Source of the DNA: Cyanophora paradoxa CCMP329
Lineage: Eukaryota > Plantae > Glaucophyta
Assembly: GCA_004431415.1 (NCBI GenBank)
Contig: QPMI01000520.1
Coordinates: 186,001-250,000 of the forward strand
DNA: 64,000 nt
Direction: 5' to 3'
Of the stretch, positions 1-11,949 are shown one piece after another. The translations under genes were made by a program, and so were the position numbers. The notes beneath the pieces were generated by a model. It had not been told where the DNA came from and made no database searches. It saw nothing but the letters and a program-made list of their open reading frames with translations. Every line of letters begins with the position of its first letter. Positions within the stretch are counted from its first letter, which is position 1.

Positions 1-3000
1 GGTCGTCCCAGCCGGCCCAGCCCGTCCCGCCCCGGGCCACTCGTCGTGCCCCAGGCTCCCCTCCTCCTCCTCCTCCTCCTCCGCCTCCGCCACCTCCGCC
101 TCCTCCTCTTCCCCGCCGCCTCCTCGAGGTCCCAGAAGGCCGCCTCGCCGTCGTCGGGCGCCTCCGCCGGGCCCGCCCGAACCTCCACTCCTCCGCCCCG
201 CCGTCCCGGCGCGGCCGCCTTCGCCTCGTCCGCGCGGGGCGGCGGCCGCGCCGGCGGCTCCCGCTCCGCAAGCTCTTCCCAGCTCTCCGCCGCCGCCGCC
301 GCCTCACCCGCCTCCGCCGCGCCGGCCCCGCATCCGCCGCGGCATCGGACGCGGCCTCGGCCTCGGCGGGGCCTCCGAGTGCGGGGCGGGGGCCTCGGGC
401 GGCTCGGCGCTGCTGCCCGACGGCTTCCGGCTCCGCGCTCGCCGGCGGCTCGCCCGGGCCGAGGCGCGCAGCGAGCCCAGACGCGGCACCCGCGCCGGGC
501 GCGCCTCGCCCGGCCCCGCCTCGCCCTCGCCGTCCGGCCCATCCTCCCCATCCCCCGGCTCCGCCGCCGCCGCTGCTGCCGCCGCCGCCGCCACCGGGCC
601 GGGTGCTGATCGGGCGCCTCGGGAGCAGGGGCGGGGCGGGGGCGCGGGGGCCGGGCCCCTGCTCGGCGTCCGAGGCGAGCTCCTCCCAGTTGTCCCGCGC
701 GGGGCTCACCGAGGGGCCCCCGCCGGCGGCGAGCACGGGCCCCACGCCCCGGCGACTCCGGCCCCACCGCCGCCCCGCTGCCGGCCCCGCCGCCAGGGCC
801 GGCGGGGGCGGGGGCGAGGGCGGCCGCGGCGGAATGGCGACCTGCGGGGCGCCTGCCGCGGCCGCCCTCGCCCTGGCCTTCTTGGAAGGGGAGGTCGGCA
901 GCGGGGGCGCCCGGAAGAGGCGCCCTCTTCGGCCGCCGCCGCCGGAGCGGGCGGGGCGCTCGAGGGCTCCTCGGGCCTGCCGGGGCGGCGGGGAGGGCGG
1001 GGGACGAGGAGGGTGCCGGCCCATCCGCCTCCTCGTCGGCGGCGTGCCGCTGGCCCCAGCCGCTCTGCGCGCGCGCGCCGTCAGGGCGGGCGGGGCGGGG
1101 CGGCCGAGGGCGCCCCCACGCACCCGGAGCCAGGAGGCGCCCCGCGGCGGCTGCACGCGAACAGGGCGCGCCCCTCCGCCGCAGGAGGCCGCGCCGGGGC
1201 GCGGGCGCGGAGGGCCCCGGGGGGCGGGGCGGGGGCGGGGGCGGGGGCGGCTGGGGGGTGCGGGGAGGGGGCGGGGCACGCGGGCGCGAAGGCGACGAGG
1301 GCGACCATGGCGAGCTTCAGGCTGGCGATGACGTCCGGCGCGAGGTTCGCGCGGGGGCCGGCCGCCAGCGCGGCCGCCCCTCGGGCCGCCCCGCGGAGAC
1401 GGCGAGGCCCTCGCGCGGGCGTCGGGCACCTCCCATGCGAGGCAGCCGTCGGCGGCGACGGCGGCGCCGCCCTCGGCGCGCAGGGCGGCGTCGCGGCAGC
1501 GGTGGAAGTGGCAGGCGGCGGCGGTGGCGGAGGGGGCGTCGGGGCCCTCCCTGCCGGAGACGCAGAGGCCGAGGGCGACGCCGTGCACCTCGCAGCGCTC
1601 CAGCGAGAGGGCGGCCCGGCGCCCCGCCAGGCGCGCCCGCACGAGCCGCGGGCCCGCCCCGCGTGCGAGAGGACCGAGTCGAGGAGGGCGAGGCGGGAGT
1701 CGTCGCCGGCGGCGCGGACGGCGTCGGGGAGGGCCCGGCGGCGAGGACGTCGCAGCGGGCGAGGCGCCAGCGGGCGCGGCGGCCGCGCAGCGCGACGCCG
1801 CCGGCGACGGTGAGGTCCCGGAGCTCGACCACCGCGTCGTCGCCCTCCACGGCGAGGGCCCCACGGCGCCGTTCCCCTCCCCGCGCACCAGCACGTGCGC
1901 CCCGGGCGCCGCCAGCCGCGCCGGGGCCCCCGCCGGCGTCCCCACCAGGTCCCCGCCATCCCCTGCGCGCCCAGGCGGGCCAGCCGCCTCGGCTCGGCGC
2001 GGCGCGGCGGCCCCGCAGGCGGTGCGGGGCGGGGCGGCGCACGCGGACGGTGATGACGACGGAGGGGCCCCGAGGCGGCGGCCGCGGCGAAGGCCTCCTG
2101 CAGCGTCCCGTGCGCCCGCGGGCCCCGCGGCAGCCCCGCGCCCACCTCCAGCCGCACCTCCTGCGCACCTTCCTCCTCTTCCCCCGACCCCCCCGCCCCC
2201 TCCTCCTCCTCCTGCGCGGGAGGCCGTGAGCCGGCGCGGCCTCGCGGGAGCTGGGAATGGGAGGGCGGGGCGGGCCTCGTCGGGGCCGGGGCCGCCCGCG
2301 GGCCTCGGCGAGGGCGCGGGCGGCGGCGGCGGCGGCCTCGCGGACGAGGGCGGGCCCCGCGCGTGCGGCCCGTCCCGCGCGAGGACGCCCGCCGCCGCGC
2401 GGGCCGCCTCCCTGCGCGCCGCGAGCTCGGCGCTCCAAGGGCCCCTGTGCCCGCCTCGACCCGCCGCAGCCGCCTCGGCGGGCGCTCGAGGACCTGCGGG
2501 AGGGCTCAGGGGCGGGGGCGGGGGCGGGGCGGGGCGGGGCGGGGCGGGGCGGGGCGGACGCGGAGGGGCAGGGCCTGCTCGGCGCGGGGCGCGTCGAGGG
2601 CCGTGGGGACGTCCCAGAGGACGCAGGCGGCGGTGCGGAAGGCGTTGGAGCGGCTGCTGAAGAGGGCGGCGCGCGCGCAGGCGTGGAGGCGGCAGTCGGA
2701 GAGCTCCGCGAAGCAGGCCGTCGACTCGAGGGGGCGGAAGGCGACGCCGTAGTCGCAGCCGGCGACGTCGCACGCCTCCATCCGCAGCCGCCCCCGGCTC
2801 GTCTCGAAGGTCACCCCGGAGCCGCCGCCCCCGCGGATCCGCGTCCCCAGCACGTGCAGGCTCGAGTTCTTGCACGCGTCCGACGCCGCCGCGCCGGCCG
2901 CCCCGTGGCGCGCCCCGTCCGAGGGCACGACCACCCCGCCGCCCTCCAGCCGGCACCGCTCCAGCCTCCACGTCTGCGGCGCGGCGCGGCGCGTGAGGGC

Positions 3001-3543
3001 CGGGGCGCGGGGAGCAGGGCGGGGCCGGGGCCGGGGGCGGGGGCGGGGGCACGCACGCAGGCGACGCCGACGAGGGCGAGGCCGCCGACGATCTCGATGC
3101 CGCGCAGCAGCACGCGCGCGCGCGAGCCGAAGAGGAGGAGGGGGCCCAGCACCGCCCCCCGCCCCTGCTCCGCGCGCAGCGTGAAGTCCACGTTCGTCAC
3201 CTGCCCCCCCGCGCGTCGGGCGGCGGTGCGGTGCGGAGCGGCGGTCGCGGGCCGGGAGCGGCGGGCGCACGTCGAAGGAGAAGCCGCAGGCGCTCCCAAG
3301 GGGATCCTCGTCCTCCCTCACGGCGATATCGAGGACGATGTCCGGAAGGTGCGCCGCCGGCAGCGCCACGCCCTCCTTCTGCAGCTGCGCCCGCCGGATC
3401 CTGCACTGCCTCCGCGCCGCCTCCAGCTCCGTGGCCGTCCGCGAGAGCGCCGAGGCGAGGCTGGGGAACACGGAGGCGCGCTGACCGCCCCAGTACGCCT
3501 CCGCGTCCACGGTCACGTTCATGGAGATGCGGCGGGCCTCCAT
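1..3543 (-). CDS. Multi-exon protein with two probable right-handed parallel beta-helix (pectin-lyase-like) regions and a low-complexity tail; the 3' end runs off the window and the 5' end may extend further upstream
   Basis: Exons give VLLRGIEIVGGL..WRLERCRLEGGGV..LHVLGTRIRGGGGSGV..LRMEACDVAGCDYGV..AELSDCRLHAC. A second block gives VVELRDLTVAGGV..WRLARCDV..LSLERCEVHGVALGL. The spacing is typical of beta-helix coils. Several frameshifts occur in G/C runs. Confidence 0.5.
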
Positions 3544-4396
3544 GTCTCAGATCGTCCTCTTGCAGCTGGGTCGTGAAATCGCTGTCAGGCTCCGAGGGTC
3601 AGACCAGGGACTGCTGGTCAAAGCGGCGCCAGCGACATCATTACAGATATGCTCAGGCGCAGCCAACCGCGCATACGTCTCGGCTGTGGGGAAGTGAAGG
3701 AGCGCACTTGACAGGGACGGGGGCGTGTGTACGGGGCCCCAAACGCCTGGTTCCGGTCCGGCTACACTCCAGCGCCGCTCATGGCTGGCGGGGACTCCGG
3801 GAAAAGGACAAGACGGGTTCGGGACGATCGGGGCTGTACGGCGTGCCAATAGTGCGGCAAAGGCCCAATTAACACACAGCGCGGCTTTGCACGCGTCTGG
3901 CTGCACCGGAGGAGTCCCGATTGTGGTATTATGTACCCTTGAAGGCAGGGGGTACGCGTAGGTCGCAGCAACGGGCCTCGACGGCGCGAGCCACAAGCCC
4001 TCAGCCGGTTTCGTTGAAGCCTTGTTAGCTCTTGGTGGCAGCTCATAGGCAGCTCGGCAAGCTCGTGGCGCGACACCGCGGCGGGAGCACGCCGGAGGAG
4101 GAGCCGAAGTGTCTGTGCTGAGTACAGTACCTTTTCGAGCTGCGTGGGAGAGTACCGGAGCGGCGCGACGAAGTCAACGGCTCTCTCTCTCACGCACACA
4201 CACACTTTCTGTGTGGCTCCATGCCGGCTGCAGCCGCGATGCAATCGCAGACCCCCACAAAGCCAGCTGCTTCGGCCCACTCAAAGTCGTTGCAGTCGCC
4301 TCGGACGCCCCGAGGATCCGTCGGTGCGCCGCCGGCTCCCCAGCGCCTCTGCCAGCGGCATTCGCTGCTGAGCGAACAGCAAAGCTTTGCCTTAGC

Positions 4397-7300
4397 ATGT
4401 CATCGCCGATATTCCCGCGCCCCGCGCTCTGGATTGCAGCAACCGCTGATTGCATGCCGAGTGCAGGGTCTCCGCGGGTCCAGAGGGTCCCCGTGCGCTT
4501 TCAGATCTTCAAAAAGACTAGCGTGGGCGACGCTGTGTACGTTGTGGGCGACGTGAAGGAACTGGGCGCGTGGAAGCACCCAGTGAAGCTTAGGTGGAGC
4601 GAAGGCCACATCTGGCGAGGCGAGGTGTGCCTGCCGCTCTCGCTTTATTGTTTGCTTTCCTTATGCACGTCAACAGATCCAGATTCCGCAATCGTGCAGC
4701 CGTTTCGAGTACAAGGCGCGTGAGACTAGTTCTGTGCCGTTGCAGAACGGCCCGCAGCGCTCTGATGCCTGCACGCAGTACGTTTTCGGTGACAGCACCG
4801 GAAAGCAGATGTCCGAAAGCGGCGCCAACCGCACGGGTCGTCTGGACGCGAAGGACGGCCCGACGGTCTTCGAGGACCAGTGGCGGGGCGGGGCCGCGCA
4901 CGAGGGCGACCGGGCGCTGGAGGAGGGCCCCGACGAGGACGTGAGGCGCCTGCGGATCGATGAGGAGGCCGTCGTTGAGCACTCGGGCCCGCGCAGCTCC
5001 CGCTGTGCGTACTCTCCTTGTCTCCGCCGTGCGGGGCTGACGAAGAGCACAGCGAACAACTCCGGCCGCTTCTCGCTTGGGGACCGGTCTGATCTGCTGA
5101 ACGCGAACGCGAGCGCACGGCGGGAGTCCTCGCCGGATGTCGGGAACTGGGGAAAGGGCGGCGCACCGCCGGCATCTGCGCCTGCGCCGCCGCCGTTCGT
5201 CCCTCCGCTGCCTATCACGAAGGAGAACGCGCCGGAGGCGCTGCTGGACCAGCCGCCGCTCTCGGCGCGCTCGTCGGAGGGCGGCGCGGGGAAGAAGAAA
5301 AGGAAGAAGAAGCGGCGCAGCTCGGGGCGTGCCTCGGGCGGCGGCGGGCAGGACGACGGGGACGCCACGGACGACCCCATCCCCACGCCCCGCGGCCTGC
5401 TGCCCACGCCCCGCGGCTCGGCCGCCGCCGAGGTGCGCCGCGCGCCTGCCCCGAGCGCCGCCTGCCGGCCCCTGACGCCCGCGCAGGCCTCGGCGGCACA
5501 GATGACGCCGCGGGGGAGAGCGGCGGGCGGCCGTCGGGCCGCGGCGGCCGACGGAGGCCTGGCGGAGAAGCAGCAGCAGCCGGCGGGCGCCTCGCCGGGG
5601 AAGGCGTCGCGGGCGTCCGAGGCCGCCGCCGCTCCGGCGGTGCCGGCGGGGCGGGCGGGTCGGGGCTGGGGATCCCGCTGGAGGGCCTGCCGGAGGACGT
5701 GGCGCGGCGGCTGCGGGAGATGCAGGAGGAGATGCAGCGCCTCAAGGCGGAGAACGAGCGGAAGCAGGCCGAGATCGAGCGCAGCCGCGCCGAGCTCGAG
5801 AAGTACAAGCGCCTCAACGCCCGCCAACAAGGCCTCATGGCCGCCTCCGCCGCCGCCGCCGCCGCCGCCACCACGGCCTCCGCGCGCGTCTCCGAGGGCC
5901 GCGCCGCCGACCCCGCATCGCCCAGCACGCCCCGGCGCTCCAGCGGCGGCCCGGCGGCAGCGTCGGCGGCGGCGGCGGCGGCGCAGACGGCTGCGCAGCG
6001 GGTGTCGGCGCCGGACGCGGCGGCGGCGGCGCTGATGGCGCGGGTCTCGGCCATCAAGGAGGCGGAGGCGGCCAGGTCCTGCGCCACGGCCGCCCCTCGC
6101 CCGCCGCACTCCGCTTCGGGCCGGGCATCATCCCGCCCCGCCCGCCGCCCCGCCCGGCTGGGACCTCACCGTCAAGGTGATCAAGGCAAACGCCGGCAAG
6201 GCGGAGGCGCCCGCCGCCCCGCGCGCCTCGTCGGGGAGCCTCGCCGCCGCGCTCGAGGCGGCGGCGACGGCCCCCGCTTCCCCCGCCGGGCGGCCCTCGG
6301 CCGGGCGCATCGTGCCGCCCCTCTGGGAGGGGGCCAAGCCCCCGGGCCTCGCCGGCGCGCTGGGGGCCCGAGCCTCAGCCCCGGGGCCCTCGCCGCTGTC
6401 CAGACCGCGGCATCCCGCCACTCCCTCTCCCCGAAGGCTCCCGCCTCCGTCCCCACGCGCCTCCTCCCCCCGTCTCAGGTCCCCATCCGCTCCGGCCGCG
6501 CCCGTCCCGCCCCGCCCCCTCCCCGCCCGGGGCCTCACCCCCTCCTGCTGCTGCAGCCGCCCCTCCCCGCCCCCGCCCGCGCCGCCCGGGGCGGGCGCCA
6601 TCCCACCGAGCGCCCAGGGTGCCAAGGCGTCTGTCCCCGCGCCCCCTGCCGCCTCGGGGGCCGCCCCTCCCCCGCCGCCATCCGCTGCTCCGCCCCCAGC
6701 GCCCTCCGCAGCCGCCGCAGTTCCTCCCCGCCCCCGGTGCCCCATCCGCGGCTGCCGTGCCGCCACCCCTCCGTCCGGGGCTGCTGTCCCCCGCTGCCTT
6801 TATCAGGTGCCGCCGTGCGCCCCCTCCGGCCGGCGTTTCCGTGCCCCCGCCGCCCCCATCGGGCGCCGCCGTGCCGCCCCGCCGCCCCCATCGGGTGCTG
6901 CCGTGCCCCCGCCTCCCACTAGGGGCGCCGCCGTGCCCCCGCCGCCAACGGGCGCCGCCGTGCCGACGCCACCGGCGGGCGCGGCTGTTCCCCCGCCGCC
7001 GACAGGCGCTGCCTTGCCCCCGCCGCCGCCCTCGGGCGGGGTTGTTCCTCCGGTGCTCCGCGGCAGCGCCGTCCCTCCGCCTCCGTCGGGCGCGGCCGTC
7101 CCTCCCCCGCCGGCCGGCACGGCCGTCCCTCCCATCGGAATCGTGCCCCCACCGCCAACAGGAGGGTCCGTGCCGCCCCCACCGCCAACAGGAGGGGCGG
7201 TGCCGCCGCCGCTCGGGGCGCCACGGATCCCCGCCCCGCCGGTGACCCCCGGCAAGTCCGCCATCCCGCCGCCCCCCGGGGCCTCCCCGGACGCCTCGCC

Positions 7301-10300
7301 CAAGCCGCGCACCGGAGCGGCGCCGCCCCGCCCCGCCCCCGCCCGGGCCGGCCTGGCGATCCCGCCCGTGCCGATCGCGCCGTCGCCCTCGCGGCGGAGC
7401 TCGGCGGCCGCCGCCGGGGCATCCCGCCCCCGCCCCGCCCTCCCTGGGCGGCCCGCTCGCCCACGCCGACTCGCTCTCGGCGGCGCTCGCCCGCTCCAAC
7501 TCGTCGGCGGCGGCGGCGGCGGGCCCGCTGGGCCCCGCCCTCGCGCTCCCCGCCGACGTGAAGCTGGCGGTGGTGCCGGCGGGGGCCGTCCCCCCCGCCC
7601 GCAAGGTCGTGAAGCACCCCACCGAGATGCGCCAATTCTTCTGGCAGAAGATCGCCCCCACCAAGGCCCGCCCCGCCCGCCCCCTCGCTGCCTGGCCGGC
7701 GGCCTCACGGGGCCGGGGCGGGGCAGGTGGCGAACTCGGTGTGGTCGTCGCTGCGGGAGGACGACGTCCCCGTGGAGGAGTCCGACCTCCAGGGCCTCCG
7801 CGAGTCCTTCGCCACCCGCGCCCCCGCCCCGCGCCGTCCGCCCCGCCCGCTCTCGCCCGCCCCGAGCCCGCCCCCTAACCCCGCCGAGCAGCGGAGGCGG
7901 CGGCCAGCGCGGGCGGGGGCCTCGGCCGCAAGGTCTCGTTCGTGCAGCCCAAGGTCACCCTCCTCGACAACAAGAAGGCGAACAACTGCGGTGCGGGCGC
8001 CCGACGCGGGGCGGCCCCGGGCGGGCTCTGACGGGGCGCAGCGATCATGCTCTCGCGGTTCAAGGTGACGAACAGGCAGATCCGGGAGGCGCTGCTGGCG
8101 ATGGACCAGAACGTGCTCAAGCTGGACGACCTCGGCCAGATCTTCAACTTCCTCCCGACGGATGACGAGAAGAAGAAGATCTCGGCGTTCAAGGGGAAGC
8201 TGGAGGACCTGGGCAAGGCGGAGCTCTTCCTCTTCGAGGTGATGCGCGTGCCCCGCTTCCGCAACCGCATCGAGGCCTGGATCGCCAAGCGCTGCTTCGA
8301 GGAGCAGATGCCCGCCCTCTCCCGCGTCCGCCCCCGCCCGCCCCGCCCCCCCAGCCCCCCAGCCCCGCCCCTCACCCCGCTCCCGCAGCTGCTCTCGGAC
8401 ACGGTGCTGGCGGCGAAGGAGATCCTCGCCTCGGGCGGCTTCGCGCACCTCCTGCAGGTCATCCTCGTCGTCGGCAACGCCCTCAACGGGGGCACCTTCC
8501 GCGGGGGCGCCTACGGCTTCAAGCTCGAGTGCCTCGTCAAGCTCAACGACACGCGCTCGAGCAACGGCAAGTCCACCCTCCTCCACTACATCGTCGCCTT
8601 CCTCGAGGAGAAGGCCGCCGCCGCCGCCGAGGCCGCCGCCCGCGAGGCCGAGGAGGAGGCGGCGCGCCGCGAGCGCGAGGAGGCCGAGGCCGCCGAGCGC
8701 CGGGAGCGCGAGGCGGCGGCGCGGGCCTCGGAGGCGGCCGCCGCCGACGCGCGCGCCGCCGCCGACCCCGAGAAGGCGGCGGAGGCGGTCGCGGCGGCGG
8801 CGGTCCGCGCGGCGGCGCGGGCCTCGGGGGACCTCACCCCGGCCTGCTCCCCGCCGGACACGCCCCGCGAGGCCGAGGCGGCGGGGCCCGAGGAGACGCC
8901 GGACCCGCTGCCGGCCCTCTCGCCGGCGGCGGCGGCGTCTGAGCGGCTCAAGTCGGCGCTGGCGTTCGGGGCGGAGCTGCCGTCACTGGAGCGGGCGGCG
9001 AAGGGCAACCTGAAGACGATGGAGGAGGAGGTCGCCCAGTTCGAGAAGGACCTCAGGGAGGTGGAGAAGGAGCTCGCCGCGTACCCCACCGACGTCGGCG
9101 TCCTCGCGTACGCCAAGTCGCACGGCGCCGGCGTCGACAAGTTCCTCCCCGTGATGACCGCCTTCGTGGAGACGGCGCGGGCGGAGCTGGCGGAGGCGAA
9201 GGAGAAGCTGGGGACGGCGCGGGCGCTCTTCCGGGCCCTCGCGGCCTACCTGGGGGACGAGATTGCGGAGAAGGCGCCCGACGAGTTCCTCCAGCTCCTC
9301 GCCAAGTTCGTGTCGCTCTTCGAGGGGGCGCGGCGGGAGCTCGCCGCGCAGCGCGAGGCGGACGCCAAGCGGACGCAGCGGGACAAGAAGAAGGCGGCGG
9401 GGCTGGCGGGGCCCAGCGGGCGCCCCTCGGCCGGCCCCGCGGCCTCGCCCAGCGCCTCCCCCGTGAAGGCCGTCACCCGCGGCGGCGCCCGCCTCGACAG
9501 CGTCGCCGAGTCGGACGAGGCCACCGCCCGCCGCGACTCCTCCTTCGACGACGTGCCCCCCCGCCCCGCCCGCCCCGCCCGCCCCTCACCGCCTCGCAGC
9601 TCGTCACCCCCGCGTGCCCTCGCCGACGGGCTCGTCGGCGCCGCCGCCGCCGTCGGTGCGCCGGCCCCGCCCCGCCCCGCGCCCCGGCCCCCGCCGGTCG
9701 CTGACGCCACTCCCGCAGCGGCGATCAAGAAGGAGAAGGAGGAGGCGGCCAAGGCGGAGGCGGCGGCGGCGATCGAGAACGCGAAGATGGCCAAGGCGCG
9801 GGCGGAGGGGTCGGTGGCCGGCCTGGGCCCCGCCGGGGCGCCGCAGCCGGCGGTGCGGGTGGTGACGCGGGCCTCGATGGCCGCCAGCCAGGGCCTCGCC
9901 CTCTCCGCCTCCTCCTCCGCGAGCCGTCCCCCTCGCCCGCCCCTCCCCCACCAACGCGCCCCGCCCCTCCCCCTCCCCCGCACTCCGCCAACCCCGCCCG
10001 CCCGCCGCCCCTCCCCGCCGAGAGCCCCGCCGCCTCGCCCCGCCCCTCCACCGCCGGTCCGCCCCGCCGCCCCTCCTCCCCCGGCGCAGCCGGCCCGCCG
10101 TCCCGCCCCTCCCCGGCCCCGCCCGCTCCTGCCGGCGCGGAGAAGCCGCCAGTGCCGAAGCTCAACCTCACAGCTGCCGCCGTCCCGCCGCCCGCGCCCG
10201 CGGCACAAGTGGAAGCCGGCAAGAGCGCTGTGCCGAAGCTCAACCTCGCCGCCGCCGCCGTCCCGCCGCCGCCGCCCGCGCCCCCGCGGCGGCGGCCGTC

Positions 10301-10725
10301 CCGCCACCGCCGGCCGGGGTTGCGGAGGCGCGGAAGAGCGCCGCACCCGTGCCGAGGCTGGACCTCGCGGGGCCCTCGCCGCGGGCGCCCCCGAGCCGCC
10401 GGCGCCCGTCGCCCCGCCCTCCATCCCCTCGGCGCCCTCCGTCGTCGCCTCGCCCCCAGCCGCCAGCCGGGCCCCCTCCGTGCCCGTCCCCAAGCTGAAC
10501 CTGGCCGGCGCGGGGGCACCGGCGGCGGCGGCGGCGCGGGGGGAGCCGGCGTCGCCGGAGGCGCAGCAGAGCCCGGAGGCGAACGCGCTGGCGGAGATGC
10601 TGGAGCGGCAGCTGAGCTTCCGGGGGGACGCCGCAGGGGACGAGGCCTGCGCCCCCGAGCACGCCCCGCGCTCCGGCGCCACCCCCAGCAAGGCCAAGCG
10701 CCCCACCGGCGGCTCCAAGCTCTGA
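4397..10725 (+). CDS. Formin (FH1 + FH2) with apparent N-terminal CBM20 starch-binding domain and coiled coil
   Basis: Spliced N-terminus VRFQIFKKTSVGDAVYVVGDVKELGAW..IWRGEIQIP..FEYKYVFG..SESGANR..FEDQW is CBM20-like. Coiled coil at about 5700-5830; poly-Pro FH1 at about 6560-7300. FH2 motifs MRQFFWQKI, SVWS, LLDNKKANNCAIMLSRFK, ILVVGNALNGGTFRGGAYGFKLECLVKLNDTRS, TLLHYIV. Formin identity is secure; the CBM20 link crosses 2-3 apparent single-base indels. Confidence 0.8.
6560..7300 (+). repeat. Coding tandem repeat, about 27-30 bp unit encoding G(A/G)AVPPPP(S/T) (FH1 domain)
   Basis: More than 12 consecutive units such as ggcgccgccgtgcccccgccgccaacg. The frame slips within C runs in the first half. 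Confidence 0.85.
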
Positions 10726-11733
10726 GCGCTTTCCGCCCCACCCCCTCCCTCCCCGCTTCTTGCCCTCCTGGCCCCCCGACTGGTCTCTGCTCTGCCCTGT
10801 CTTGTGTATACCGATTGTAGGAAAAGGCGAAGTTTCGAATCCTTGAATGGACGAGCCTCGGGCCCGGGGCCCTGCCGCAGTGCCGCAGCACCTGAGCCCC
10901 TCGGGGCTTCTTTGCAGTTGGCCGCCTGCAATTGCCAAGAACCGTCGGAACTTCGGAATTGCCGCAGTTCCAATCTTCGGAACTTGGAAATTCGGCGTCG
11001 GCACTGCGGCAGTCGACGTCCTGTCTGACGGTCAGGCCCTCAGGGCCTGATCATGCCATGATGGGGCTACAAAGCTACAAGGCTAGCTATAGGGGCTTCA
11101 AGGCTTCAAGGCTTCCTAGAAGTTCCTTGCCAACGTGTAACTTGGCAAGTTGGAGTTCTGCTTCGAGTTCAGGCTTGCCAAGTTGGCTCAAGACTCTCAG
11201 ACTCTGAGAGTGTGAACGTTAACGTTAACGTTGAACTTCGCGATCGCCGAATCACTGCGCATGCTGATCATGAGGTGCCACGGCCCGGCGGTGGCCGCCG
11301 GCCCGCCGCCGGGCCGCGGGCCGAATAAACTATAGCTAGCTTGCCTAGGCCTAGGCCTATAGCTAGGCCCTGAGGACTTCCGAATTTTCGAAGTTCTGCT
11401 GTCACTGTCATGCATATGATCACCGTGGCACTGCAGCACCGCGGCACACTCGAGCTCGAGCTCATCCGGTCAGCCCGCGGCCTGCGCATGCTGGCAGGGC
11501 CGCGGGGCGTTAGTCACTGAGTTTTAGTTTGACTTCGAAATTCAGTTCAAGGCATACTAGGCCTGACCTATAGCTAGGCCGACGTGCATTTGAAAATTCA
11601 TGCAAGATTCCAAAGCATTTCGTAAGCGGAGGGGGAGGGGGGGGGGGGGAGCGGTGGGGGAGGAGGAGGATCCGAAGGGGGGCTGGTGATCATGAAATTA
11701 AAGTACGTAAGACGTGGTGCTGGGGGAAAAATA

Positions 11734-11770
11734 ACGTCGACGTCGACCGCCCGACGGTCGACGTCGACGT
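11734..11770. repeat. Perfect hairpin with 16-bp arms and a 5-nt loop
   Basis: acgtcgacgtcgaccg-cccga-cggtcgacgtcgacgt. Confidence 0.95.
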
Positions 11771-11949
11771 CGGACTCTGCCCTGTCGACGTCGGACTCCG
11801 ACGGGCCGAGCCTCGGAGACTCCGAGATATCGATTCCGGATCCTGCTGATGCGCGGGGCCCGGGCACGGTGTGCCGCGTCCCGGCCCCCTGGGGAATATC
11901 GCGGAGAGTCGAGGTGCCTACCTCTCGAACATGAGAGGCACTGTGGCAC

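What the first reader, a model, noticed from the sequence alone, without database searches (positions are those of the whole stretch)
4397..10725. Formin with an N-terminal starch-binding CBM20 domain: a candidate starch-granule actin nucleator
Seen: a spliced CBM20-like domain starts about 15 residues after the ATG. Exon-like sequence then continues through a basic motif (KKKRKKKRR), a coiled coil, FH1 and FH2, without the AT-richer spacer that separates other genes here. Established: formin N-termini I know of are GBD/FH3, PTEN-C2, signal+TM, PDZ or C2, and glaucophytes store starch in the cytosol, where actin is. Inference: this protein could nucleate or tether actin on starch granules for positioning or partitioning. 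Caveats: the join crosses apparent indels near 5650 and 6070-6150, and the Trp of the CBM20 WExGxNR motif is Ser (MSESGANR), although LGxW, EYK and the second-site Trp are kept.
Basis: partly seen in the sequence, partly recalled or inferred. Interest (0 to 1): 0.88.

Follow-up and report, generated by a model that had tools for sequence, protein, structure and literature searches.

The report
Formin with a starch-binding head
One Cyanophora paradoxa gene encodes an actin-filament-building formin whose front end is a starch-binding module; one other microbial eukaryote has the same layout, no paper I could search describes it, and it suggests that actin is assembled on the starch granules lying in the cytosol.

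Summary
The architecture is real; the function is inferred. Pfam finds CBM_20 at the 5' end and FH2 downstream on the + strand. Spliced RNA contigs from three studies tile about 3962-9551 with three short holes and no UTR-like drop in GC.

The true start is ATG 4221, so CBM20 begins about 42 residues in.

The public Cyanophora paradoxa model tig00020961_g16673.t1 (EukProt, 1885 aa) already joins CBM_20 and FH2. A 4168-nt contig from another organism (L001) carries one unbroken 1286-codon ORF with the same collinear CBM20-FH1-FH2 layout.

The CBM20 fold is confirmed (pLDDT 84.6; TM 0.84 to STBD1 CBM20). Cyanophora keeps three of four canonical site-1 residues, with Ser for the second Trp; L001 keeps all four.

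No paper searched links FH2 with CBM20. Most likely reading: a formin anchored to cytosolic starch that assembles actin there (about 0.5). One-gene architecture: about 0.9.

The parts
3962..4220 (+). 5' UTR, minimum extent (part of exon 1)
   Evidence: RNA contigs X1 and X3 lie unbroken on 4000-4322 and run 38-46 nt beyond 4000. In-frame TGA at 4119; no ATG in 4000-4220.
4221..4323 (+). Start codon (ATG 4221; second in-frame ATG at 4239, used by the public model) and the coding part of exon 1
4324..4466 (+).
   Evidence: Joint 4322>4466 (cut +1) in X1 and X3, with 157 nt on the shorter side; splice sites.
4487..4890 (+). CBM20 starch-binding domain, spliced from exons 4467-4624, 4677-4715 and 4779-5004. 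Introns: 4625-4676 (GT..AG) and 4716-4778 (GC..AG)
   Evidence: Pfam CBM_20 E 3.4e-15 on P0003 residues 36-114. Joints. AF2 pLDDT 84.6. Foldseek TM 0.84 to STBD1 CBM20 8x8k.
5005..5052 (+). Intron 4 (GT..AG, 48 nt)
   Evidence: Joint seen in X1, X3 and X8, three studies.
5290..5318 (+). Polybasic motif KKKRKKKRR in exon 5053-5432
   Evidence: the exon is covered by RNA contigs. Not conserved in L001.
5433..5486 (+). Intron 5 (GT..AG, 54 nt)
   Evidence: Joint in X1 and X3.
5487..7665 (+). Long exon: linker, coiled coil, FH1 and the start of FH2. The window carries 1-nt deletions here relative to the RNA
   Evidence: RNA contigs lie on 5485 to about 5632, 5660-5983, 5954-6476, 6879-7306 and about 7361-7663. 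RNA has an extra base after 5511, 5535, 5560, 6092, 6361, 6450, 7415 and 7432. GC3 frame track.
5696..5830 (+). Predicted coiled coil (DVARRLREMQEEMQRLKAENERKQAEIERSRAELEKYKRL)
   Evidence: Only weak, sub-threshold coiled-coil Pfam matches (DivIVA E 7e-5, ATG14 E 9e-4). GC3 1.00 in frame 1.
6560..7440 (+). FH1: proline-rich region; its core is a tandem array of 27-nt units (xGAAVPPPP) at 6804-7207
   Evidence: Tandem Repeats Finder; translations.
7603..9321 (+). FH2 domain. Exons: 7603-7665, 7727-7835, 7892-7990, 8042-8325 and 8389-9321. Introns: 7666-7726 (GC..AG), 7836-7891, 7991-8041 and 8326-8388
   Evidence: Pfam FH2 E 1.9e-84 on P0003 residues 944-1439. Joints. Aligns to DAAM1 and mDia1 FH2 structures, E 2e-43.
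8611..8940 (+). Ala/Glu-rich insert of about 110 residues inside FH2, specific to Cyanophora
   Evidence: Covered without a gap by RNA contig 8389-9551. Absent from DAAM1 and from L001.
9322..10725 (+). C-terminal tail. It holds at least one further intron (model: 9655-9717), four VPKLNL-type repeats (10152-10536) and the stop TGA at 10723-10725; the last residues are -SKL
   Evidence: RNA depth dips over 9516-9712.

Best explanation
Shown: window positions about 3962-10725 (+) are one gene of Cyanophora paradoxa, public model tig00020961_g16673.t1. Its mRNA starts translation at ATG 4221. The protein of about 1,900 residues runs: short N-terminal leader, CBM20 starch/glycogen-binding beta-sandwich, disordered linker with a polybasic patch, coiled coil, FH1 with a dozen or more proline tracts, FH2, and a long repetitive tail. 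Inferred mechanism: the protein stays in the cytosol, because it has no signal peptide, no transmembrane segment and none of the N-terminal Phe that cyanelle transit peptides carry (that last point is from my own knowledge). The CBM20 docks it on the surface of the cytosolic starch granules. The coiled coil and FH2 dimerise it. FH1 feeds profilin-actin to FH2, which nucleates filaments and rides their barbed ends. Filaments would then grow from the granule surface and could tether, cage, move or partition granules, or hold them near the cyanelles. In Cyanophora the canonical glucan site keeps the first stacking Trp, the Lys and the Asn but has Ser for the second Trp, so binding is probably weak and reversible. 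The orthologue L001 keeps the complete site. My probabilities: one-gene architecture about 0.9; glucan-anchored actin assembly about 0.5.
For: One transcript. Spliced contigs in runs X1 and X3 (GT..AG or GC..AG joints, so RNA), and the two shorter spliced pieces listed for a third study (X8: 4897-5173 and 8167-8547), lie on the gene. The listed X1/X3 pieces cover from 3962 or earlier to about 5632, then 5660-5983, 5954-6476, 6879-7306 and about 7361-9551. Among the loose ends that were listed (24 of more than 800), none is an A-run; the listed ones sit at GCC/GCG repeats. Coding GC3 periodicity runs unbroken from about 4480 to 10720, and GC does not fall to the intergenic level of 0.53-0.65. 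An in-frame stop at 4119 closes the ORF upstream of ATG 4221. The public model P0003 (EukProt EP00741_Cyanophora_paradoxa_P017262) holds CBM_20 (E 3.4e-15) and FH2 (E 1.9e-84). Conservation. L001 (JGI 3300017186, 53% GC) has one 1286-codon ORF with CBM_20 (E 3.3e-15), three long proline tracts and FH2 (E 2.4e-84). It is collinear with P0003: CBM20 39% identity (E 3e-24), FH2 45% (E 2e-71). CBM20 identity. AF2 pLDDT 84.6 and pTM 0.77. Best structural matches are starch/glycogen-binding CBM20 domains: glucoamylase at rmsd 2.0 A, STBD1 at TM 0.84. STBD1 site 1 is W293/K322/W334/N339 (PMC11406230); Cyanophora matches W, K and N, and L001 matches all four. The nearest CBM20s found in metagenomes belong to laforin-like CBM20-DSPc proteins, which are intracellular glucan-targeted enzymes. 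FH2 competence. It aligns over its full length with DAAM1 and mDia1. The columns NNCAIML / NCNILL and KLNDT / KIADT are conserved; their assignment as the actin-contact Ile and Lys is from memory. Starch is cytosolic in Cyanophora (PMC13666283, citing Plancke 2008).
Against: No single RNA contig joins CBM20 to FH2. Listed contigs leave holes at 5633-5659, 6477-6878 and 7307-7360, and contigs cannot show transcript ends. An open frame is no evidence here, because at over 80% GC all three frames are open for long stretches. P0003 was predicted on this same assembly, so it is not independent of the assembly. Only L001, one contig, links the two domains in the second organism; L002 starts downstream of the CBM20. 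The second stacking Trp of site 1 is Ser in Cyanophora, and site-2 Tyr527 of glucoamylase is Val, so starch affinity may be low or lost. Nothing here shows localisation, glucan binding or nucleation. No further CBM20-FH2 protein was found, so the family is known from two sequences.
Confidence: 0.5

Rival explanations
1. Glucan sensor rather than anchor. The CBM20 works as a regulatory head that takes the place of the missing GBD/DID. Binding of starch or soluble malto-oligosaccharides would switch the formin on or off and so couple actin assembly to carbon status, as the CBM48 of the AMPK beta subunit couples a kinase to glycogen. No stable residence on granules is needed.
For: The protein has no GBD/FH3/DAD, so some other control of FH2 is needed. 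The weakened site 1 (Ser for Trp) fits transient, low-affinity binding. The AMPK beta glycogen-binding domain is a weak match (Foldseek E about 1e-2, TMq 0.38-0.39) among the hits of the low-confidence single-sequence model (pLDDT 58.6).
Against: No DAD-like partner motif conserved between P0003 and L001 was found; only CBM20 and FH2 align. The L001 orthologue keeps a full-strength site 1, which is more typical of a docking module.
Confidence: 0.2
2. Degenerate or re-purposed CBM20. In Cyanophora the domain no longer binds alpha-glucan and serves as a protein-protein module or a vestige. The formin then acts elsewhere, for example at the cleavage furrow or the cortex, perhaps through the polybasic patch.
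For: The site-1 Trp is replaced by Ser, and this is confirmed by RNA. Site-2 Tyr is Val. A KKKRKKKRR patch could bind acidic lipids or act as an NLS.
Against: The first Trp, the Lys, the Glu and the Asn of site 1 and the conserved W-SEGHIW core are kept. The fold is predicted with pLDDT above 90 in the core. The orthologue has an intact site, so the ancestral role was most likely glucan binding. The polybasic patch is not conserved.
Confidence: 0.15
3. Two neighbouring genes merged by mistake: a small CBM20 protein (4221 to about 5600) and a separate FH1-FH2 formin (about 6500-10725), fused by the gene predictor and by my reading.
For: No listed contig bridges 5633-5659 or 6477-6878. The public model needs three invented 'introns' to get past frameshifts; RNA contradicts two of them and no listed contig covers the third.
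Against: RNA contigs run on from the CBM20 exons to about 5632 and resume 27 nt later. GC stays at or above about 0.76 over 5251-7950 (300-nt windows) with GC3 periodicity, unlike every intergenic stretch seen here. There is no room for a 3' UTR, a promoter and a 5' UTR. The same fusion exists as one 1286-codon ORF in another organism.
Confidence: 0.05

Closest known systems
Plant-type class II formins (PTEN-C2 - FH1 - FH2), e.g. hits P0006, P0007, P0013
   Same: They are among the best FH2 matches outside Cyanophora (33-38% identity). The logic is the same: an N-terminal targeting domain, then FH1, then FH2, with no GBD/FH3/DAD.
   Different: Their N-terminal module is a PTEN-like C2 domain that binds membranes. 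Here Pfam finds no PTEN_C2, and CBM_20 stands in its place.
Diaphanous-related formins (DAAM1, mDia1, FMNL3, INF2)
   Same: The FH2 aligns over its whole length to their solved structures (E 2e-43 to 1e-26). FH1 lies directly upstream and a coiled coil lies upstream of FH1.
   Different: No GBD, FH3 or DAD is present. An Ala/Glu-rich insert of about 110 residues sits in FH2. The tail is about 450 residues long and repetitive.
Intracellular CBM20 targeting proteins: STBD1 (glycophagy receptor), laforin (CBM20-DSP), GDE5
   Same: The N-terminal CBM20 has the same fold (TM 0.84 to STBD1 8x8k; laforin 4rkk and GDE5 2z0b also match). It sits in a cytosolic, non-amylolytic protein, where the module serves to bring another activity to the polyglucan. 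The closest CBM20s found in metagenomes are laforin-like.
   Different: The cargo here is an actin nucleator, not a phosphatase or an autophagy adaptor. Cyanophora lacks the equivalent of STBD1 W334.
Organelle-anchored actin assembly factors (own knowledge: CHUP1 on chloroplasts, INF2 on ER/mitochondria, Spire/FMN on vesicles, Toxoplasma FRM2 near the apicoplast)
   Same: The proposed working principle is the same: a nucleator fixed to a cargo builds actin on that cargo to position or inherit it.
   Different: Those are anchored through membranes or membrane proteins. Here the anchor would be a membrane-less polysaccharide granule. The comparison is from memory and was not tested here.

Membership tests
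Formin (FH2 family, PF02181) | FH2 domain above the curated threshold | tested here: met
   P0003: 284.4 bits against a cut-off of 34.8, profile positions 3-371 of 372. Window exons alone: 217 bits.
Formin (FH2 family, PF02181) | Proline-rich FH1 directly N-terminal to FH2 | tested here: met
   27-nt tandem array at 6804-7207 encoding xGAAVPPPP units; proline-rich from about 6560 to 7440.
Formin (FH2 family, PF02181) | Conserved actin-contact Ile (knob) and Lys (post side), and the GNxMN motif | tested here: met
   Alignment to DAAM1 shows NNCAIML / NCNILL, VVGNALNGG / AFGNYMNKG and KLNDTRS / KIADTKS. Which columns are the critical Ile and Lys rests on my memory of the Bni1p, mDia1 and DAAM1 mutants.
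Formin (FH2 family, PF02181) | Nucleates actin and caps barbed ends processively | not testable with these tools
   Needs pyrene-actin or TIRF assays.
CBM20 (PF00686) | Domain above the curated threshold | tested here: met
   P0003: 56.1 bits against a cut-off of 23.3, profile positions 2-85 of 97. L001: 56.1 bits.
CBM20 (PF00686) | Beta-sandwich fold superposable on solved CBM20 domains | tested here: met
   AF2 on a 10-sequence alignment: pLDDT 84.6. Foldseek: glucoamylase 2vn4 at rmsd 2.0 A, STBD1 8x8k at TM 0.84.
CBM20 (PF00686) | Canonical binding site 1 complete: two stacking Trp plus Lys and Asn (STBD1 W293, K322, W334, N339; PMC11406230) | tested here: not met
   Cyanophora has W (LGAW), K (EYKY) and N (ANR) but Ser at the second Trp (MSES); RNA agrees with the genome here. 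L001 has all four (WETGPNR).
CBM20 (PF00686) | Binds granular starch, glycogen or cyclodextrin | not testable with these tools
   Needs pull-down, ITC or SPR.
Diaphanous-related formins | GBD/FH3 (DID) at the N-terminus and DAD at the C-terminus | tested here: not met
   No Drf_GBD, Drf_FH3 or Drf_DAD at E <= 0.01 in P0003 or L001.
Plant class II formins | N-terminal PTEN-like C2 domain | tested here: not met
   No PTEN_C2 in P0003 or L001, although the FH2 relatives P0006, P0007 and P0013 have it.
Laforin-type glucan phosphatases | CBM20 followed by a dual-specificity phosphatase domain | tested here: not met
   No DSPc in P0003. DSPc is present in the CBM20 relatives L003, L005, L006, L008 and L009.

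The most novel reading that the evidence does not exclude
CBM20-formins are a conserved, previously undescribed class of actin nucleators that dock directly on a membrane-less storage-polysaccharide granule. In organisms that keep starch in the cytosol, they would build actin from the granule surface to position, cage or partition granules. This would be the first direct molecular link between the actin cytoskeleton and starch.
Probability: 0.4. Interest if true: 0.8.

Novelty: new variant of a known kind. Interest (0 to 1): 0.62.

Why it matters
Formins are aimed at their site of action by their N-terminal domains. The known ones bind Rho GTPases, membranes or scaffold proteins. A carbohydrate-binding head would extend that logic to a polysaccharide granule.

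How cytosolic starch granules are positioned and inherited in glaucophytes, red algae, dinoflagellates and relatives is not known to me. This gene gives a concrete, testable candidate.

It also fills a gap named in the main survey of plant-lineage formins, which had no glaucophyte data (PMC2386819). Together with unverified notes of other CBM20 fusions in this genome, it hints that Cyanophora uses CBM20 as a general address label for its starch granules.

There is also a practical point. The locus shows that this assembly carries many single-base deletions in G/C runs, which break reading frames and force gene predictors to invent introns.

Tried and rejected

2. I reject the long 'joints' as splices (5982>8718, 5983>6567, 5986>8334, 6156>7505, 6271>8668, 6534>8357). 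They have only 20-21 nt on one side, non-GT/AG ends, and sit in GCC/GCG or proline-codon repeats.

3. Two 'introns' of the public model are contradicted by RNA contigs that cover them and are frameshift bypasses: 5640-5695 (contig 5660-5983) and 7254-7305 (contig 6879-7306). A third, 6743-6812, is untested.

4. Word-indexed protein searches gave little. The FH2 ORF returned two distant formins. The linker ORF returned nothing. The CBM20 region of P0003 returned only itself among proteins of 1037-3299 aa. These blanks say little, given the length and word filters.

5. The second half of the CBM20 searched alone, with intron read-through, gave no Pfam or PDB hit. This was resolved by using P0003.

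6. The single-sequence AF2 model was poor (pLDDT 58.6) and was replaced by the alignment-based model.

7. The metagenome scan with the CBM20 alignment returned 11 loci, none with FH2.

8. Exact look-up of the L001 protein in four start variants found nothing, so its organism stays unknown. There is no dinoflagellate spliced leader at its 5' end.

9. ESM Atlas searches by features and by shape found only ordinary CBM20 clusters.

10. ORFs of the upstream neighbour gave no Pfam family.

11. Joined step left out: no hand-joined spliced model was sent to any search or folding tool. Exons were searched by reference, and the joined protein was taken from the public record P0003. A spliced, indel-corrected translation was made inside a script only to trace the frame.

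Full report
**What is in the window**

The region is extremely GC-rich, with 0.64-0.86 GC in 300-nt windows from about 4650 to 10800. It is flanked by AT-richer stretches of 0.53-0.65 GC at about 3450-4800 and 10800-11850.

Exon-by-exon Pfam searches by reference found two domains on the + strand:
- CBM_20 in 4397-4627: E 2.2e-8, 34.2 bits against a cut-off of 23.3.
- FH2 in 8044-9420: E 5.6e-64.

**Transcript evidence**

I laid the contigs of four public runs on 4000-9900.
- Runs X1 and X3 come from two studies. Their contigs skip short GT..AG or GC..AG segments, so they are RNA.
- Run X8, from a third study, shows two of the same joints.
- Run X12 lies unspliced on 4000-5401, so it is DNA-like.

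The RNA-proven introns are 4324-4466, 4625-4676, 4716-4778 (GC..AG), 5005-5052, 5433-5486, 7666-7726 (GC..AG), 7836-7891, 7991-8041 and 8326-8388.

In the mRNA the frame is closed by TGA at 4119 and opens at ATG 4221, which is the first ATG in 4000-4322. The N-terminus therefore reads MPAAAAMQSQ...GSVG/SPRVQRVPVRF, and the CBM20 starts about 42 residues in.

The listed RNA contigs lie on these stretches:
- 3962 or earlier to about 5632
- 5660-5983
- 5954-6476
- 6879-7306
- about 7361-9551 and beyond

Three holes remain, at 5633-5659, 6477-6878 and 7307-7360. All three fall in extreme G/C runs or in the FH1 repeats. Among the loose ends that were listed (24 of more than 800), none is an A-run; the listed ones sit at GCC/GCG repeats. 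Contigs cannot show ends, so this is weak evidence.

**Assembly errors**

The RNA contigs carry one extra base after 5511, 5535, 5560, 6092, 6361, 6450, 7415 and 7432.

A GC3 phase track shows an unbroken coding signal from about 4480 to 10720. The frame changes exactly where those bases are missing.

After the listed corrections a single stop remains. It is explained by the uncorrected shift inside the hole at 5633-5659.

Because all three frames are open for long stretches at this GC content, I do not count ORF length as evidence. The evidence is the RNA tiling, the periodicity and the lack of any UTR-like composition.

**Public model**

An exhaustive HMMER search with the FH2 piece returned P0003 at 100% identity (1885 aa). 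P0003 is EukProt EP00741_Cyanophora_paradoxa_P017262, also named tig00020961_g16673.t1. This identifies the organism.

Pfam on P0003 gives CBM_20 at residues 36-114 (E 3.4e-15) and FH2 at 944-1439 (E 1.9e-84). There is no GBD/FH3/DAD and no PTEN_C2.

Mapping P0003 back to the window shows that it uses the RNA-proven introns and starts at the second ATG, 4239. It also has three further 'introns': 5640-5695, 6743-6812 and 7254-7305. RNA contigs cover two of them, so those are frameshift bypasses. The linker and FH1 of the public protein are therefore partly mistranslated, but its architecture is right.

**Independent support from a second organism**

FH2 hit P0005 (43% identity) led to contig L001: 4168 nt, 53% GC, JGI sample 3300017186.

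L001 has one uninterrupted ORF of 1286 codons. It holds CBM_20 at residues 45-124 (E 3.3e-15), three long proline tracts and FH2 at 788-1171 (E 2.4e-84).

BLASTP shows that it is collinear with P0003:
- CBM20: 39% identity, E 3e-24.
- FH2: 45% identity (E 2e-71) and 36% identity (E 3e-27).

At 53% GC an ORF of that length cannot arise by chance. The same fusion in a genome and in a foreign contig makes a merging artefact very unlikely. The organism behind L001 could not be named.

**The CBM20 domain**

With a 10-sequence alignment, AlphaFold gives pLDDT 84.6, above 90 in the core. Foldseek places the model on solved CBM20 domains: glucoamylase at rmsd about 2 A, and STBD1 at TM 0.84. Laforin and GDE5 are also in the list.

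STBD1 binds maltotetraose at site 1 through W293, K322, W334 and N339 (PMC11406230). The alignments show:
- Cyanophora keeps the first Trp (LGAW), the Lys (EYKY) and the Asn (ANR), but has Ser at the second Trp (MSES). The RNA contig over this exon has no differing letter.
- L001 and all nine other relatives keep Trp at that position.
- Glucoamylase site-2 Tyr527 is Val in Cyanophora, while the later Trp (HIW) is kept.

A metagenome scan seeded with two conserved peptides found the closest CBM20s in laforin-like CBM20-DSPc proteins of AT-rich eukaryotes. None of those loci has FH2.

**The formin part**

FH1 is a 27-nt tandem array at 6804-7207, inside a proline-rich stretch from about 6560 to 7440.

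FH2 aligns over its whole length to DAAM1, mDia1, FMNL3 and INF2. The GNxxN motif is conserved, as are the columns I remember as the actin-contact Ile and Lys.

An Ala/Glu-rich insert of about 110 residues (8611-8940) is exonic by RNA. It is absent from DAAM1 and from L001.

**Mechanism**

Everything beyond the architecture is inference. The leader has no hydrophobic segment and no N-terminal Phe of the kind cyanelle transit peptides carry (the Phe rule is my own knowledge). Starch in Cyanophora is cytosolic (PMC13666283).

The simplest reading is a formin docked by its CBM20 on starch granules that grows actin from their surface. The rivals are:
- a glucan-responsive regulatory head;
- a degenerate CBM20 with another role;
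- two merged genes.

I rate these at about 0.5, 0.2, 0.15 and 0.05.

**Comparison with what is known, and novelty**

The survey of formin architectures by Grunt et al. lists GBD/FH3, DAD, PH, C2, PDZ, PTEN, TM, ANK and RhoGAP. It lists no carbohydrate-binding module and states that glaucophyte data were lacking (PMC2386819).

Full-text searches for FH2 with 'starch binding' found nothing, and FH2 with CBM20 found one paper which, by its title and abstract, is on Fusarium oxysporum cell-wall degradation; I did not open it. Formin with Cyanophora returned three papers whose titles are on other subjects; I did not open them.

The gene model and its Pfam hits already sit in a public proteome. The sequence is therefore not new, but the architecture appears undescribed. 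I call it a new variant of a known kind.

First-stage notes on other pieces of this genome mention CBM20 fused to an ADP-ribosylglycohydrolase, to NADAR and to a pseudokinase. They are unchecked and I use them only as a lead.

No hand-joined spliced sequence was sent to any search or fold. Exons were searched by reference, and the joined protein was taken from the public record P0003. The spliced translation served only to trace the frame.

Noticed in passing
window 5511, 5535, 5560, 6092, 6361, 6450, 7415, 7432 (and probably about 5633-5659, 6093-6165, about 6870-6880, 9940-10420): The window's assembly lacks single bases in G/C runs compared with RNA contigs of two studies. The frames break, and the public gene model bridges the breaks with invented introns. 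Other GC-rich genes of this assembly probably have the same defect.
   Followed up: partly
window 4716-4778 and 7666-7726: Two of the nine RNA-proven introns use GC..AG instead of GT..AG. All nine are very short: eight are 48-63 nt and one is 143 nt.
   Followed up: partly
window 10714-10725: The protein ends in -SKL, the canonical peroxisomal PTS1 tripeptide. L001 does not share it. It could be chance; not examined further.
   Followed up: no
window 10152-10536: Four copies of a VPKLNL(A/T)(A/G)-type motif lie in the C-terminal tail, in three different frames of the window (more assembly indels). I could name no known motif; it is absent from L001.
   Followed up: partly
window 8611-8940: An Ala/Glu-rich insert of about 110 residues sits inside the FH2 domain, between the LLHY helix and the AAK helix. 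RNA shows that it is exonic. It is absent from DAAM1 and from the L001 orthologue.
   Followed up: partly
window 9552-9717: RNA depth collapses over 9516-9712, and the long FH2 contig leaves the genome at 9551. The public model places an intron only at 9655-9717. A single 165-nt intron at 9553-9717 would keep the frame, but the joint was not among those listed.
   Followed up: no
L003, L005, L006, L008, L009 (metagenome contigs, 25-28% GC): The closest CBM20 relatives found carry CBM_20 (one or two matched stretches) followed by a dual-specificity phosphatase domain. They are laforin-like proteins, presumably of ciliates or other AT-rich protists.
   Followed up: partly
window 2506-3543 (-): A divergently oriented ORF starts at ATG 3543. 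It has strong GC3 periodicity and no Pfam family, and it lies about 420 nt from the formin transcript's known 5' end, so the two may share a promoter region.
   Followed up: partly
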